Shown here: positions 9,691 to 15,769 of the stretch, in pieces
Layout: every line of letters starts with the position of its first letter
How positions within the stretch are numbered: position 1 is the first letter of the stretch
Assembly: GCA_001179505.1 (NCBI GenBank)
Contig: CDMY01000366.1
Location: 62,001-126,000 of the forward strand
Length of the DNA stretch: 64,000 nucleotides
Source of the DNA: Vitrella brassicaformis CCMP3155
Taxonomy: Eukaryota; Protista; Chromerida
Reading direction: 5' to 3'
The notes under the pieces: model-generated
What the model was told of the DNA's origin: nothing
Database searches by the model: none
Seen by the model: only the letters and a program-made list of their open reading frames with translations
Made by a program: the position numbers and the translations under genes

Positions 9691-11007
9691 ATGTCCTCGA
9701 CGAAGCTGTGAGGGCACGTGGACTTATTGTTGGTGACATGGGCTTCGTGTCCCGCCGCCATCTCTTCCACATTTGAGGCTGCGCATTGCAGAACAAGATG
9801 GCCGCGAGGATGGCAATAGGCGCCATGGCAGGACTAGGCAGGACGTATTCGGGGAGCCACGCACGAGAAGGGGGCCGACAAATATGACACGGACGGAAGG
9901 CGGCAAGATGTGCATGCGAGTGGGGGCGTCTCGATCTACGCGACATATGTTATGTGCTGGATGATTCATGGTATGCTGGTCAGTGTCTAGATTTGCCCTT
10001 CCTCGGACATCTCCATCTTCTGTACGTTTGTAGATGCACCGCACCGAACGGGAGAATCCATCTGCGTGAGTTTTCAAACAGCCCGCACACAAGGTCACGA
10101 CCAGTCGTAAGACAAGAAACTCTCACCACTCTCGCTGACGGCCAGTCAAGTCAGTCAGTCAGTCAGTCAGACGCCCGCACTCTCACCTCACATCGCAACA
10201 CTCGCTGCCCGCTACGCTGCCACGCCGCGCAGGGCTCTCAAACAACTCTCACACGCAACACGCACGCACATGGTCATGTTGGCATCCCATCCCCCGATCT
10301 TTTTCTCTGTCTGTGAAAAAGCACCACCCTACCCCACCTTGTCGACCTACCCACGGGCTGATCTGATGCACACCACGCACCACACGAGTTGGCTGCCCGC
10401 AGGATGCCGCTCTGCGGCCCTGCTCGCTGCCTCGTGCTTGCATGAATGCATGGTGCAGGCCATGTTATGTTGTCTCGCCTCGCCAGCACTGTGAGTGACC
10501 AAGGCCCGCCCCGCCAAGCCCTCATCACCGGTGACCCAGGGCAAAATTGGTTCATCCATGCAATGCATACATACATCACACCAACGCACGCAGAGACACA
10601 CACATCCCGGCAAAGGAACCCTCAAGCAGACAGACGCGTACATCCACGGGCAGAGAGGCCGCTGTACCAATCAAACGGCCACCAGCCGTCTTGGCATGAT
10701 GGAACACATCACGCGCATATGTGTATTGTATGAAGGGAAAGCCAGTCAGGCGGGACGGGAAGAGCAAGTGGCCCATGCTGGCGCGGCACGTACCAATAAA
10801 ATCAATCAGGCAGAAAGAAACACAGAGAGAGAGAGGTGTGTGGAGAGCAGGGTGTGGTGTGAAAAGGGGTACAAACGTACATGCGCCAAGCATACATACA
10901 CACACAGCGAAACACAACAAGGGTCGGGAGGGAGGCTGCCAACAGGACAGGCTCGTCGTGTTGCAGTGTTCGCTCACTCATTCATTCATCTCATGAATCG
11001 AATCGAG

Positions 11008-13434
11008 TCACTTGGCGACCCCGTCGACGGGGTCGCCGACATACCCGTCCCTCTGCATGTCGCCATAGACGGGGTCCTCCGCCGTCTGCAAAAAGAGACA
11101 GAGGTGTCCACCCGGGGGGATGCACTCAGTCTGTCTCGCTGGCTGAGAATCTGTTTGTGCTTTTCTCAGCTCACCTCAGAGTACCATCCATTGCCGAGAT
11201 ACCCCGACCTGGGGATGCCTGCGGCGTCGAGCGACGGGTCAGCCGGCCGCAGTAGGATATCCTCGACGTCGCGCTGGATGGTGGCACACATGTCCGCCAG
11301 CGTCAGCTGCTTGTTGTAGTAGTCGAACGGCTCCTCAATGAAATGACCGATCTCCTGGTGGACACAAAAACAAAAGCAGAAAGGAGACAAGAAGGTAAGG
11401 CCGCACTCACTCACTCACAGCCGGAGGGACAGGGCCTCCACCTCGCTGCCCCACTCCTGTCTGTACCTCGATGGAGAAGAGTCCCCACTGGAGGACGAAC
11501 ATAGCCAGAGGCGTGAGCAGGCCCAGTTTGGTCACCAGCACGAAGGGCAGGGTGGTGCAGAAGACCGTCAGGAAGCGCGACGTGTGTCGGGAGTAGGACT
11601 TGGGGATGGGCGTCTTGGCGATACGCTCACACGCTCCCATCACGTCGCACAGAGTGCCCAGGCACTTCTCGATCTGCACACGGTAGGCTGACACACACAA
11701 GCAAGACATGGGCAGAGGTGTGAGGTGCAAGGTGCTGACTGCAGGTCTGTCTGTTCCGCCCATCCCCTTACATAGAGCCGTGGCTGCCTGGCTACATACA
11801 TACATGGGTTGGTGAAGAGTTCGGGTCGCACGCTGAGGGAGATGCTCTGCTGACCGCTCTGCTGACGGAACATCTCAACCACCGAGGACTCTGCACACAC
11901 ACAGGCAGCACAAAACACCACAGCACACCATCCGCTTCTGGCTGGCTGGCCGGCCCCACGCACCTGCCCTCCCTCCCTCCCTCCCTCCCCGTATCTGTCT
12001 GTCAGTCTGCCGGTCAGGTCGATCGGCCCCTCACCCACCGACTCACCCACCCTCCCACCTTTGTTGTTGACGCCCACAGCCTGCGGTGCGTTGACGTTGA
12101 TGCCCACCGGCGGGGGGCTCGTCTGCCCAACCGGCTCCAGGCTCCCCTGCAGCGCCAGACGCAGCTCCAGATTCAGCATACGCAGAATCGCCAACGGAGG
12201 GCTTCCCACTCTGCATAATGGAGGATGGATGGAATGAACCAAACCGACGAGGGAGACAACACAACACAACCACACACACACACACACGAACAGGTGGGTG
12301 AAGTGACAGGTACAGGTACGTGAGTGACTATGTGTGTCTCTCTCTTACTTCTTGAGGGCTTCGTACTCCGTCGGTGTGAAGTACTTCTCTATCTCTGAGA
12401 TGTCGTCGAGGCCCTGTAGATGCTGCTTCAGCGCCGCACAAAAGGCCGCCGTCAGGTTGCCGAACCCTACACGGGCCATGCCAACCACATCGACAGACAT
12501 GATGTGCACATGGGACGGACCGGAGCCCACGTGTGGACTGGCTGCTTATCTATCGCCTGCTCACTCACTCTTGTGGTGTCTGGGGTGGGTGTATGTCGCC
12601 GCACAGTAGGCGATCTCGCGCGACTTGTTGACCAGCGTACCCCAAAGCTTTCGAGCCTCCCAGAACCTGCCGTGCCGTACACAGACGTACAGGTGGGTGT
12701 CAGTCACCTGTCAGCTGGCCACCGTGGGAGCGAGCCATCTGTCTGTCCATTTACCGACCTGTCGTAGGATGCATTGGTCCTGAAGACGAGCAGCAGGGCG
12801 AGAGCGCTGGCCATGATGGAGTGTGGCAGCACGGGGAACTCAGGCAGCTCGGGATAATACTCCCACAATGCAGCAACGCCGGCAGCCCACAGCTGTGCAC
12901 ACACGCACACGCACACACCACAGGCAGAGCAGACAGATGAATGAATGAATGAGTGGATGGATTCATTCATTCATGAGTCAACCCCTCAGCGCGTGCAGAT
13001 GTGTGTGTGGGTGCAGACAGAGCCTGAGCTGCGGCCCCACCGTGTTCCAGAAGAGGTGCGATTGGATGCGCTCGAAGATCTTGGACCTGGGCAGGGATTG
13101 AATCGCATACAGCCAGTCCTGACACAGCAGTGGACACCCATACCACAAGAGCGTGCAAAATGAGTCTGCCCGTCGCTGGCTCTATCGCCTTCCGCCGGCC
13201 TGCCCTCACCTTGGACGAGTATCTGACGGGCTTCTTGAGTGCCAGAGACACTGTGGCTGGCACATCTGCCTCGCCGCCGGGGAATGGCCTCGTCACCTTC
13301 CTGGTGTGCGGCCGCAGGATGTTCGACGGCTGCAGAGGGCTGGGGGGGACGAATGCAGGCATGGCTGTGTCGGCATCTGTCGGTGCAAGCAGCACGGCAG
13401 CCGAGGCCGCCAGACCCGTCAGCGAGATCTTCAT
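11008..13434 (-). CDS. bestrophin-family anion channel (VCCN1/BST/YneE type) with bipartite plastid-targeting leader
   Basis: Spliced RYSSKDWLYAIQSLPRSKIFERIQSHLFWNT, LALLLVFRTNASYDRFWEARKLWG, ERIAKTPIPKSYSRHTSRFL and FSIEEIGHFIEEPF. N-terminus MKISLTGLAASAAVLLAPTDADTAMPAFVPP (signal plus AF motif). Confidence 0.92.
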
Positions 13435-13583
13435 CGGCTGAGGACAGCAGCGATGTGGTGGGTGGGAATGGGGCAGACGGGTGTATGGGACGGGCTGATA
13501 GAGGGGAGAGAAAGGTTTGAAGAGGCGTCCAGTGATCACTGGCAGTGTTTTGTGCGATTTGCTCTAGCCAAAATTGAGAAGTG

Positions 13584-13640
13584 TTTAGGGTTAGGGTTAG
13601 GGTTAGGGCTTAGGGTTTACCCCAAACCCTAAACCCTAAC
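13584..13640. repeat. interstitial telomere-type repeats in inverted head-to-head arrangement
   Basis: tttagggttagggttagggttagggcttagggttta followed by ccccaaaccctaaaccctaac, in the spacer between bestrophin and CA. Confidence 0.85.
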
Positions 13641-13738
13641 TCTCCGGTTCGCGAACGCCGCCATCGACAGATCTTGCTTACCAAGCAAGATCACAGGAGC
13701 AAGATCTTTGATTTTCCAATATACAGCGAACGAACCAG

Positions 13739-15146
13739 ATGCGGCTGAGGCATGCAGTATACTTACTCAGCGCTTCAATACTCGCATCAGCGCTCCGCGC
13801 GAAGCCTTTGATTCCGTGCGGATTGTCGACTGGAGCACGCCGCGCGGCGCACTCGCGTCTTTCGTTGACGGATGGCAGCATTGATGACGGCGTGACTTTC
13901 GACGAGGTGGGTGGATGCAGATCGACGCGCCATTGTGTGTGTGATACCTGCCTGTCTGCAGCTGGTGGACCGCCAGCTCAGTCACATCAAAAGGAACACG
14001 GCCGGGCCACCACGCAAGGCAGCCGCAGAGGAGCCGCTTGGTGTGCCGGAAGATGCTGCGGGGCAGCCATGCATCCTCACCAGAGACGTACGCACATCGA
14101 CTGACTGCGGCTGCCACGGCAGAGGTGTCATCTTCTCACTCACTGTTCTGTGTCATTCCATCAGACCCCAGGGCTTGACTATCGCTATCAGGGTGCAGAC
14201 TGGATCTGCGGCTCGTGCGCCTCCCGAGTGCGACAGAGCCCGATCAGCTTCCCTCCTACGGCACCCGCTTCCCCCTTCTCTTTCAAATACGGCTTTCGTG
14301 GCCCTGGGCCGGTCGTCTTGCGCAACACTGGATTCTCGATCGAGGTGCGGCGAAAGGAAACCAGAACCGACGCCATTCCGATATCATTCGAGGATCTACC
14401 TGGCGGTGCGCCAGTCGCCAAAGGCGCCAAGCGTGCTACGGATGACACGGAGGTGCCGCCACCCGCGCCCAGCTCCCGCCTGACGCCCTGTGCTCAAGTG
14501 GCGGCCGACCTGCAGGTGACAGAGAGAGACGAGAGGGATTCACTCGCAAGCCAAGCTGGGTGTGGTGTTTGTCGTGCTCGAACAGCTGATGGGCGGCAAG
14601 TTCGCGCTTGACAATATTCACTTTCACGGCCCTGCGGAGCATCTGTTCGAGGGCGAGCGCCACGCCCTCGAGATGCATGTGGTGTCCCAGCTGGTCCGCC
14701 CCGACCCGACAGCTGTCATCCAGCCCCACTACTGTGTCCTGGCCTTCACGTTCATTGTGGGCGAGTCCAATTCTTTCCTGGAGGAGATCATCAAGAGGGG
14801 CGTTCCCGGTGTCGGTGGCTCACTGACCTTCGTCCCCTCAGCCGATGGATTCGACATCGACCGGCTGGTTCGGGAGAAGGGCAGGGACGGGTTCTATTAC
14901 TATCCTGGATCGCTGACTGTGCCGCCCTGTTTGGAGGCAGTTGAGTGGCTTGTCGCGCGGAAGCCGATTGAGGCGTCGGCGAGTCAGCTGGCGGTGTTCC
15001 TGAGTGAGTTCACGACGAACGGCAGGGGGAACTATCGGGTAGTGCAGAACACCAAGAACTCCATGTTGAGTCAGCTGTGTGTGATGGAGGGCAAGCCCAC
15101 AAAGAGGAGGGGTGTGCTGCAGCGGCTGGGCATCAGAAGACCATGA
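13739..15146 (+). CDS. alpha-class carbonic anhydrase with N-terminal signal/transit-like leader
   Basis: RQSPI, NTGFSIEV, zinc-binding NIHFHGPAEH...LEMHVV (three His intact), YYYPGSLTVPPCLEAVEW and GNYRVVQ. Leader MRLRHAVYLLSASILASALRAKPLIPCGLSTGARR. Confidence 0.92.
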
Positions 15147-15769
15147 GATAGATGTCATCCATCCATCCATCCACTGCATGGGTGTGGTATTTTGCTTGGT
15201 ACACATGTATAGCTCATCTGCAGCGCATGGGTATGTATATTGTGGCAGTCTGTCTGTCTGTCTGTGTGTATGTATCTGTGAGTATGTATGTATCATCGCA
15301 GGGCTCGCTGTTGTCTCTTTGCACATACATCTTTCTGACCTGCCTAAGTGTGCCGTGGGTATATATATAGTGTCTGCGTGTCTGTCCGTCCGTCTGTTTC
15401 AGTGCATGTTTGGCCACTGACCCGCTGGTATGACCAATCAATGGACATTTGTTGCTTGAAGCGCTTGCAGCATCCGCCAATGCGAGCCAGCCATCTGTCC
15501 CACGTATGTAATGTGCGTGTTGAGATCGATAGCTCGGCAGGCAGGCAGACTTGCACACATGCATGTAGGAATCGTCCAATGGTCATATTGTACAATCCTA
15601 TGGCTACCCCACTCCCCACACCCAGCCACCCACTCACCCCTATCATCCTTCGCTCAATCAGTCAGTCAGTCACCATTCGTACGATCGGTGCACACGATGC
15701 ACACGCACACACGCATACAATGCACGAATGCATATGTCAGCCCTCAGCCTTTCCTCCACGATGTTATGT

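What the first reader, a model, noticed from the sequence alone, without database searches (positions are those of the whole stretch)
11008..15146. Head-to-head plastid bestrophin plus alpha-carbonic anhydrase: candidate co-regulated CO2-concentrating module
The ATGs (13434 minus, 13739 plus) are only 304 bp apart, and both proteins have signal-plus-transit-like leaders. In Chlamydomonas, thylakoid bestrophins (BST1-3) supply bicarbonate to the lumenal alpha-CA CAH3, and diatom bestrophins are also CCM-linked (established). A physically linked divergent channel/CA pair in a chromerid-like alga would be a compact operon-like CCM unit. I do not know of one being described.
Basis: partly seen in the sequence, partly recalled or inferred. 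Interest (0 to 1): 0.72.

Follow-up and report, generated by a model that had tools for sequence, protein, structure and literature searches.

The report
Back-to-back bestrophin and carbonic-anhydrase genes
In the alga Vitrella brassicaformis, an expressed gene for a plastid-type anion channel (bestrophin) and an expressed gene for an alpha carbonic anhydrase sit back to back on a short shared promoter region, but that layout is the rule in this compact genome and nothing yet shows that the two work together.

Summary
The window is Vitrella brassicaformis CCMP3155, scaffold C366. A 10-exon bestrophin gene lies on the minus strand (CDS 13434-11008, 456 aa, CEM06220.1). A 4-exon alpha-carbonic-anhydrase gene lies on the plus strand (CDS 13739-15146, 401 aa, CEM06234.1). 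Their ATGs are 304 bp apart. RNA-type contigs from three runs confirm the splicing and leave only 115 bp (13536-13650) between the transcript ends.

Both proteins start with a signal-peptide-like segment followed by a basic, Ser/Thr-rich stretch. The bestrophin and its chromerid relatives carry the plastid-type Phe after the predicted cleavage site.

The CO2-concentrating-module reading is unproven:
- The CA has no second hydrophobic (thylakoid-lumen) targeting domain.
- Its only detected relative is a Vitrella paralog.
- None of six other algal bestrophin loci has a CA gene within 10 kb.
- The genome paper reports a median gene spacing of 92 bp, with head-to-head pairs over-represented.
- No CO2-series expression data were available, and Chromera synteny could not be tested.

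In favour, Vitrella has a prominent pyrenoid and I found no beta-CA or LCIB genes.

Another scan note reports a second Vitrella alpha-CA head-to-head with a rhodopsin. In passing: the promoter core holds an inverted telomere-repeat palindrome that recurs at about 30 internal sites.

The parts
11008..13434 (-). Bestrophin (Bestrophin_2 family) coding region, 10 exons: 13434-13209, 13117-13041, 12892-12757, 12664-12568, 12465-12349, 12210-12059, 11890-11804, 11687-11466, 11353-11175, 11085-11008 (some boundaries can shift by 1-3 nt). It encodes 456 aa = CEM06220.1 / A0A0G4F397.
   Evidence: Pfam exon hits; spliced RNA contigs; translation identical to P0152; transcript loci L001 and L002 encode the same 456 aa; 103 bits to the Klebsiella bestrophin structures and 92 bits to 7ek1.
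13209..13434 (-). Bestrophin exon 1, which encodes the presequence. It has a hydrophobic segment at residues 1-19, a candidate cleavage site ..MPA|FVPP.., and then a basic Pro/Ser/Thr-rich stretch up to the conserved RYSSKDW start of the channel domain (about residue 71).
   Evidence: Relatives show the same pattern: Cvel_453 ..SEG|FTP.., Cvel_9606 ..SHA|FVP.., Vitrella paralog ..ASA|FLL... A Phe after the cleavage site is reported for chromerid plastid proteins (PMC6668581).
13435..13535 (-). Bestrophin 5' UTR (at least 101 nt, no upstream ATG).
   Evidence: RNA contigs end at 13535 (X1) and 13532 (X2). L001 has 101 nt before the ATG. Sequence read.
9976..11007 (-). Bestrophin 3' UTR of about 1 kb.
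   Evidence: X1 record 1 carries 824 letters beyond position 10800. L001 has about 1050 nt after the stop codon.
13536..13650 (.). Untranscribed core between the two transcript ends (115 bp), the presumed shared divergent promoter.
   Evidence: No RNA-type contig of X1, X2 or X8 is laid here, while the DNA run X3 covers its flanks. Contig ends are only bounds on the true start sites.
13580..13643 (.). Inverted telomere-repeat palindrome: TTAGGG/TTTAGGG units facing CCCTAAA units. It is the only such cluster in the 64-kb window.
   Evidence: (TTTAGGG)n is the telomere at contig ends of this genome.
13651..13738 (+). CA 5' UTR (at least 88 nt, no upstream ATG), with a perfect 10-bp stem and 3-nt loop at 13670-13692 and a third copy of the arm at 13698-13707.
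   Evidence: X8 record 12 starts at 13651; inverted repeats I8 and I9; RNA fold -25.4 kcal/mol, z = -3.5, 0 of 200 shuffles as stable.
13739..15146 (+). Alpha-carbonic-anhydrase coding region, 4 exons: 13739-13906, 13962-14087, 14165-14515, 14586-15146. It encodes 401 aa = CEM06234.1 / A0A0G4F2A0.
   Evidence: Pfam PF00194. RNA contigs give joints at 13904/14165 (with 128 unlaid letters, taken as exon 2) and at 14512/14583 (equivalent to 14515/14586). The transcript-derived protein P0001 spans the exon 3-4 joint. Translation identical to P0253.
13739..14087 (+). CA exons 1-2, which encode a roughly 100-residue leader. It has a hydrophobic segment at residues 5-21, a candidate cleavage site ..ASA|L.. 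or ..LRA|K.., a basic Ser/Thr-rich stretch, and then an acidic linker. There is no second hydrophobic segment.
   Evidence: The highest 13-residue Kyte-Doolittle mean over residues 25-100 is 0.32.
14619..14678 (+). Codons of the three zinc-ligand histidines (H227, H229, H246) and the glutamates E233 and E244. T326 and C330 lie further on in the ..SLTVPPC.. motif.
   Evidence: Alignments to solved alpha-CAs including 4xiw: HFH..EH..EMH and SLT.PPC are all conserved. The N-terminal Cys in ..GSC..RQSPI.. aligns with the Cys of 4xiw.

Best explanation
These are two ordinary, separately annotated nuclear genes of Vitrella brassicaformis. They are transcribed away from each other from a promoter core of about 115 bp. 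The minus-strand gene makes a red-lineage, plastid-type bestrophin. It enters the ER through a signal peptide, carries the Phe-type transit signal for import across the four plastid membranes, and most likely forms a pentameric anion (HCO3-/Cl-) channel in a plastid membrane, as its relatives do. The plus-strand gene makes a divergent, bacterial-type alpha-carbonic anhydrase with an intact zinc site and the conserved cysteine pair. It also enters the secretory route. It probably works in a lumen-like, oxidising compartment of the plastid complex or endomembrane system, not demonstrably the thylakoid lumen. The back-to-back position is best explained by the genome's general compaction and its excess of head-to-head pairs. 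At most it confers the modest co-expression typical of such pairs. A dedicated, co-regulated CO2-concentrating unit is possible but not shown. Shown here: the gene models, expression, spacing, family membership and catalytic residues. Inferred: targeting, channel substrate, and independence of function.
For: Gene models and expression rest, and identity with the public proteins. The bestrophin groups with Chromera Cvel_453 and Cvel_9606 (SH-aLRT 90) inside a clade of red-lineage algal homologs, and it matches solved bestrophins. The CA zinc ligands, T199 equivalent and Cys pair are conserved. The leaders are described, and the chromerid Phe motif in PMC6668581. On layout, PMC4501334 reports a median of 92 bp between genes, an excess of head-to-head pairs and usually modest co-expression. 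No CA lies within 10 kb of bestrophin homologs in Tribonema, Nannochloropsis, Rhodosorus, Galdieria, Ectocarpus or Prymnesium. None of the other six Vitrella bestrophin loci lies beside an alpha-CA hit; the nearest pair is 29 kb apart on C138. The only CA relative found is a paralog with 47% identity, 336 kb away. Other large ORFs near the pair showed no carbon-related Pfam family.
Against: Adjacency of these two particular families is rare under random placement (about 0.007 expected pairs). Bestrophin plus a lumenal CA is exactly the pair used in the Chlamydomonas CCM, and a bestrophin plus a lumenal CA of another class in the diatom CCM (PMC6708349, PMC11142338). Vitrella has a prominent pyrenoid (PMC6492006), and chromerids use an oxygen-sensitive form II Rubisco (PMC3468483, about Chromera), so a CCM is expected. 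I detected no beta-CA or LCIB-type CA, which leaves alpha-CAs as likely plastid CAs. Both transcripts occur in the same three RNA-type runs. The CA keeps the cysteine pair also present in lumenal CAH3.
Confidence: 0.55

Rival explanations
1. The pair is a true CO2-concentrating module. The bestrophin carries HCO3- across a plastid (thylakoid or pyrenoid-tubule) membrane. The neighbouring alpha-CA dehydrates it to CO2 on the far side. The shared promoter switches both genes on together at low CO2. It would be a Vitrella-specific, physically linked analogue of BST1-3 plus CAH3.
For: The family pairing matches the Chlamydomonas model (PMC6708349), and diatom bestrophins are low-CO2 inducible (PMC11142338). 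The spacing is 304 bp between ATGs and 115 bp between transcript ends. Both proteins have secretory/plastid-type leaders. Vitrella has a prominent pyrenoid. I found no beta-CA or LCIB hit in the genome. The CA has an intact active site and a Cys pair like CAH3. Chance adjacency of these families is about 0.007.
Against: There are no CO2-response or co-expression data. The CA leader lacks a thylakoid-transfer hydrophobic domain. The pairing is absent at six other algal loci. No CA ortholog was detected in Chromera or elsewhere. Head-to-head layout is the default in this genome. Another scan note reports a different Vitrella alpha-CA head-to-head with a rhodopsin (s1-212030), which shows how easily themed neighbours arise.
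Confidence: 0.25
2. The two genes are functionally unrelated neighbours with non-CCM roles. The bestrophin would be a VCCN1-like thylakoid chloride channel that tunes the proton-motive force and photoprotection. The CA would be secreted, or would sit in the chloroplast-ER or periplastid space, for pH or inorganic-carbon equilibration at the cell or plastid surface.
For: The bestrophin matches the plant-type 'Bestrophin-like protein' structure 7ek1 at 92 bits, nearly as well as the bacterial ones. The residue after either candidate cleavage site in the CA is not Phe. The Cys pair suits an oxidising secretory compartment (the link between this pair and secreted alpha-CAs is from my own knowledge). 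The PtBST1 knockout in a diatom also changes non-photochemical quenching (PMC11142338).
Against: Leu after an ASA site is accepted for plastid import in diatom predictors (from my own knowledge), and Phe is less conserved in Vitrella (PMC6668581). A plastid location for the CA is therefore not excluded. No electrophysiology exists for any chromerid bestrophin.
Confidence: 0.18
3. The pair is an annotation or assembly artefact. The two genes would not really be adjacent, or one would be a pseudogene.
For: None found.
Against: DNA contigs of run X3 span the spacer flanks colinearly. Both reading frames are intact and spliced in RNA-type contigs. The public proteins are identical to the models, and their EukProt numbers are consecutive (P009602, P009603).
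Confidence: 0.02

Closest known systems
Chlamydomonas reinhardtii BST1-3 (thylakoid bestrophins) with lumenal alpha-CA CAH3 (PMC6708349; CAH3 structure 4xiw)
   Same: The two protein families are the same. The CA aligns with 4xiw at 58 bits, with conserved zinc ligands, the SLT.PPC motif and the Cys pair. The alga also has a pyrenoid.
   Different: The Vitrella CA has no recognisable lumen-targeting domain. Low-CO2 induction and thylakoid location are untested here. No paper I read describes BST1-3 and CAH3 as neighbouring genes. The plastid has four membranes, so the targeting logic differs.
Diatom bestrophins PtBST1-4 and TpBST1-2 (PMC11142338)
   Same: They are red-lineage complex-plastid bestrophins with bipartite leaders. 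The Vitrella protein falls among red-lineage algal homologs.
   Different: The diatom proteins are shown to be low-CO2 inducible and thylakoid- or pyrenoid-located, and none of this is known for Vitrella. The lumenal CA in diatoms is of another class (theta, from my own knowledge). No gene adjacency is reported.
Plant thylakoid chloride channel of the bestrophin family (PDB 7ek1 'Bestrophin-like protein'; I recall this as VCCN1, from memory) and Klebsiella bestrophin KpBest (4wd8)
   Same: The fold family is the same (Bestrophin_2), with 92-103 bits to these structures over both halves of the channel domain.
   Different: The Vitrella protein has an insertion of about 80 residues (roughly 222-300) and an N-terminal bipartite leader. 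Its ion selectivity is unknown.
Generic head-to-head gene pairs of chromerid genomes (Woo et al. 2015, PMC4501334)
   Same: The orientation is divergent and the transcript gap is 115 bp, against a genome median of 92 bp. Both genes are expressed.
   Different: The gene content happens to match a known functional pairing. The spacer lacks the GCGAGCT word that another scan note links to such spacers and carries a telomere-repeat palindrome instead.

Membership tests
Alpha-carbonic anhydrase (PF00194) | Profile match above the curated cut-off | tested here: met
   80.6 bits against a cut-off of 27 for exon 4 alone. The Atlas structural neighbours are CA families, TM 0.66/0.76.
Alpha-carbonic anhydrase (PF00194) | Three zinc-ligand histidines plus the Glu106, Glu117 and Thr199 equivalents | tested here: met
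   H227, H229, H246, E233, E244 and T326 align with the conserved positions of 4x5s, 8w7x, 4c3t and 4xiw.
Bestrophin_2 (PF25539) anion channels | Profile match and alignment over both halves of the channel domain | tested here: met
   Exon hits of 41.9, 78.4 and 21.6 bits. Match of 103 bits to KpBest structures in two stretches covering residues 89-222 and 305-404.
Complex-plastid bipartite targeting signal | N-terminal signal peptide followed by a transit-peptide-like region, with Phe (or another bulky residue) right after the cleavage site | tested here: inconclusive
   The bestrophin has a hydrophobic segment at 1-19 and then ..MPA|FVPP.., with the same pattern in Cvel_453, Cvel_9606 and CEM37137. 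The CA has a hydrophobic segment at 5-21 and then ASA|L or LRA|K, with no Phe. No SignalP or ASAFind run was possible, and Phe is less conserved in Vitrella (PMC6668581).
BST plus lumenal-CA type CCM module | CA located in the thylakoid lumen (needs a third, hydrophobic thylakoid-transfer domain in the leader) | tested here: not met
   The CA leader has only one hydrophobic segment. The highest 13-residue hydropathy mean over residues 25-100 is 0.32. This is sequence-level only, and non-canonical routes are not excluded.
BST plus lumenal-CA type CCM module | Induction of both genes at low CO2 | not testable with these tools
   Only contigs of three RNA-type runs were available, with no CO2 series. 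No paper links Vitrella with bestrophin, and none treats a CCM in chromerids.
BST plus lumenal-CA type CCM module | Bestrophin located in the thylakoid membrane | not testable with these tools
   Only the import signal can be read from the sequence.
Conserved gene cluster | The same neighbours in related genomes | tested here: not met
   0 of 6 algal bestrophin homolog loci have a CA-family gene within 10 kb. The decisive genome, Chromera velia, could not be reached. The seventh look-up (Amorphochlora) was withheld.
Bidirectional promoter pair | Divergent transcripts starting less than 1 kb apart, both expressed | tested here: met
   Transcript contig ends lie at 13535 and 13651. Both genes are covered in X1 and X8, and X2 covers only the 3' part of the CA.
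Bidirectional promoter pair | Correlated expression across conditions | tested here: inconclusive
   Contig depths are 83.5 vs 9.0 (X1), 40.5 vs about 5 (X2) and 500 vs 30 (X8). The tool states that contig depth cannot rank genes.

The most novel reading that the evidence does not exclude
Vitrella, the pyrenoid-bearing chromerid, has assembled a lineage-specific, physically linked carbon-supply unit. A plastid bestrophin and a dedicated alpha-CA would be driven together by low CO2 from one 115-bp promoter core, whose central element is a telomere-repeat palindrome. It would be the first operon-like CCM gene pair in an alveolate alga and an entry point to the unknown CCM that serves form II Rubisco.
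Probability: 0.2. Interest if true: 0.65.

Novelty: new member of a known kind. Interest (0 to 1): 0.3.

Why it matters
Chromerids use an oxygen-sensitive form II Rubisco, and no paper I found treats their CO2-concentrating mechanism. If this pair were co-induced at low CO2 and co-located, it would name the first two candidate components of that mechanism. It would also show functional gene linkage in a eukaryotic alga. As it stands, the pair is a reasonable pair of candidate genes for a CO2-shift experiment, not a discovery. Both genes are already in public annotation. The layout is the genome's default, and the pairing is not seen in other algae.

Tried and rejected
- Spliced models. They were searched exon by exon by reference. 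No typed joined sequence was sent to any search tool. The joined translations were built only inside scripts from window.fa. They proved identical to the stored proteins P0152 and P0253, which were then used by id.
- CA relatives. Word-based protein searches for the CA found only itself and one Vitrella paralog, so no CA tree or Chromera ortholog could be obtained. The Atlas search added only 'alpha-CA family'.
- Genome context in Vitrella. The look-up of encoding contigs returned only transcript contigs for the Vitrella bestrophin, because the genome's own records are left out.
- Chromera synteny. It could not be tested. The Chromera proteins are held without contigs.
- Füssy et al. 2019. The supplements do not mention CA or bestrophin.
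- Coding-strand model. A codon-usage model trained on the two genes was too weak, with about 860 codons of training. I replaced it with GC-by-codon-position screening plus Pfam.
- Bacterial bestrophin-CA linkage. A look in bacteria was dropped, because the search for related loci returned only four near-identical Planctomycetota loci.
- GCGAGCT promoter word. This word from an earlier scan note is absent from this spacer.
- Artefact reading. Rejected: see the rival explanations.
Full report
**What is there**

The genome G000 has 72,700,666 bases in 1064 contigs, and the window is C366:62001-126000. Cluster look-ups name the organism as Vitrella brassicaformis CCMP3155, which agrees with the published assembly size and scaffold number (PMC4501334).

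Pfam matches Bestrophin_2 on three minus-strand exon ORFs and Carb_anhydrase on the plus-strand ORF 14562-15146.

I laid the contigs of four public runs on 10800-15400. X1, X2 and X8 behave as RNA: they hold about half of the sampled words and skip introns. X3 behaves as colinear DNA. These contigs give the following models.

- The bestrophin has ten exons (CDS 13434-11008) with introns of 89-168 nt. Its 5' end lies at 13535 or 13532, and its 3' UTR is about 1 kb.
- The CA has four exons: 13739-13906, 13962-14087, 14165-14515 and 14586-15146. Its 5' end lies at or before 13651.
- Exon 2 of the CA rests on two things: 128 unlaid letters inside X8 record 12, and the public model.

I searched the models exon by exon by reference. 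The joined translations were made only inside a script. They equal the stored public proteins P0152 (CEM06220.1, 'Bestrophin homolog', 456 aa) and P0253 (CEM06234.1, 'carbonic anhydrase', 401 aa). Both genes are therefore already annotated, and their EukProt numbers are consecutive.

**The spacer**

The ATGs are 304 bp apart, and each is the first ATG of its transcript. Only 115 bp (13536-13650) lie between the transcript contig ends.

That core holds an inverted telomere-repeat palindrome at 13580-13643. The CA 5' UTR has a perfect 10-bp hairpin.

**The proteins**

The bestrophin aligns with the Klebsiella bestrophin structures (103 bits) and with 7ek1 (92 bits) over both halves of the channel domain. 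It carries an insertion of about 80 residues.

Its closest relatives are Chromera Cvel_453 (44% identity) and Cvel_9606. The three form a clade with SH-aLRT support of 90 in a quick tree, because the careful search did not finish. Two other Vitrella paralogs form a separate clade. The next closest relatives are homologs from red algae, ochrophytes, haptophytes, cryptophytes and chlorarachniophytes.

The CA is divergent. Word-based searches found only itself and a paralog with 47% identity on the same scaffold at 412.6 kb. Against solved structures it is nearest to bacterial-type alpha-CAs, and Chlamydomonas CAH3 (4xiw) ranks fourth. The three zinc histidines, both glutamates, the threonine of SLT.PPC and the cysteine pair are all conserved.

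**Targeting**

Each protein has one N-terminal hydrophobic segment followed by a basic, hydroxylated stretch.

- The bestrophin has Phe after a plausible cleavage site (MPA|FVPP). So do Cvel_453, Cvel_9606 and the paralog CEM37137. This fits the chromerid bipartite signal described by Füssy et al. (PMC6668581).
- The CA has ASA|L or LRA|K. This is compatible with plastid import but not diagnostic of it.
- The CA has no second hydrophobic domain in its roughly 100-residue leader. A canonical route to the thylakoid lumen, where CAH3 works, is therefore not supported.
- The cysteine pair suggests an oxidising compartment. That is my inference from general knowledge of alpha-CAs.

**Is the pairing meaningful?**

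Points in favour:

- About 7 bestrophin and about 11 alpha-CA loci among 22,817 genes give about 0.007 adjacent pairs by chance.
- Vitrellaceae have a prominent pyrenoid (PMC6492006).
- I found no beta-CA or LCIB-type exon hits in the genome.
- Bestrophin plus a lumenal CA is the established core of the Chlamydomonas CCM, and diatom bestrophins are low-CO2 inducible (PMC6708349, PMC11142338).

Points against:

- The genome paper reports a median of 92 bp between Vitrella genes, an excess of head-to-head pairs among close neighbours, and mostly modest co-expression of such pairs.
- None of the other Vitrella bestrophin loci lies beside an alpha-CA hit.
- No CA-family gene lies within 10 kb of bestrophin homologs in Tribonema, Nannochloropsis, Rhodosorus, Galdieria, Ectocarpus or Prymnesium.
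- The chance estimate is post hoc. Another scan note (s1-212030) already reports a different Vitrella alpha-CA head-to-head with a proton-pump rhodopsin.
- Contig depths (bestrophin about 8- to 17-fold above the CA in all three runs) cannot be used as expression measures.
- No paper in the library links Vitrella with bestrophin, or chromerids with a characterised CCM.

**Verdict**

The CCM-module interpretation is a reasonable but untested hypothesis, with a probability of about 0.2-0.25. The most likely reading is an ordinary head-to-head pair. The decisive tests are a CO2-shift expression experiment, Chromera synteny at Cvel_453 and Cvel_9606, and localisation of the CA.

**Side observation: telomere-repeat palindromes**

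(TTTAGGG)n is the telomere at contig ends of this genome. The inverted arrangement TAGGGTTT, 0-15 nt, AAACCCTA occurs 36 times, at about 30 sites, in the genome. The reversed control pattern occurs 0 times, and about 0.3 matches are expected from length alone.

In every case where Pfam could orient a flanking gene, a gene's 5' end abuts the palindrome:

- the two genes in this window;
- DUF4291 (L008);
- an FAD/NAD-binding N-terminus (L009);
- an Aminotran_5 N-terminus (L024);
- TspO (L027).

In L009 the other flank is the 3' end of a peptidase gene, so the element marks promoters in general and not only divergent ones. This looks like a telo-box-type promoter element. I did not find it among the scan's earlier notes.

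Noticed in passing
window 13580-13643: An inverted telomere-repeat palindrome (TTAGGG/TTTAGGG units facing CCCTAAA units) lies exactly in the 115-bp untranscribed core between the two genes. It is the only such cluster in the 64-kb window.
   Followed up: partly
G000 genome-wide, e.g. L007 1054-1151, L008 1087-1159, L009 1051-1101, L011 954-1009, L024 2500-2521, L027 2489-2517; also C366:60433-60468, 1.5 kb before the window: TAGGGTTT-N(0-15)-AAACCCTA palindromes occur 36 times (about 30 internal sites), against 0 for the control and about 0.3 expected. In all 5 Pfam-orientable cases a gene's 5' end abuts the element. This is a candidate telo-box-like promoter element of Vitrella. The true telomere is (TTTAGGG)n.
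   Followed up: partly
window 13669-13707: The CA 5' UTR carries a perfect 10-bp stem with a 3-nt loop (GATCTTGCTT / AAGCAAGATC) plus a third copy of the arm. This allows two mutually exclusive hairpins. The RNA fold has z = -3.5, and 0 of 200 shuffles are as stable. It could be a translational or transcriptional control element, or a palindromic protein-binding site.
   Followed up: partly
G000:C366 at 76.6 kb (this gene), 131.0 kb (5 kb beyond the window end) and 412.6 kb: Three of the roughly 11 alpha-CA loci lie on this one scaffold. The one at 412.6 kb (CEM06500.1, single open frame of 387 aa) is the closest relative of the CA studied here, at 47% identity.
   Followed up: partly
G000 whole genome: The exon-level six-frame search found no hit for beta-CA (PF00484) or LCIB/theta-CA (PF18599). 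For PF18599 the control genomes did not ring either, so that blank is weak. One CaMKII_AD/iota-like locus lies on C454.
   Followed up: no
window 15156-15270: Just after the CA stop codon there is a short low-complexity, dispersed repeat that begins with CATC-type units. In every run it attracts hundreds of partial contigs, very high summed depth and many false joints.
   Followed up: no
P0152 residues about 222-300; P0253 residues about 160-215: Both proteins carry lineage-specific low-complexity insertions relative to solved homologs. The bestrophin has about 80 residues between the two halves of the channel domain. The CA has a Pro/Ala-rich stretch before the HFH zinc motif.
   Followed up: no
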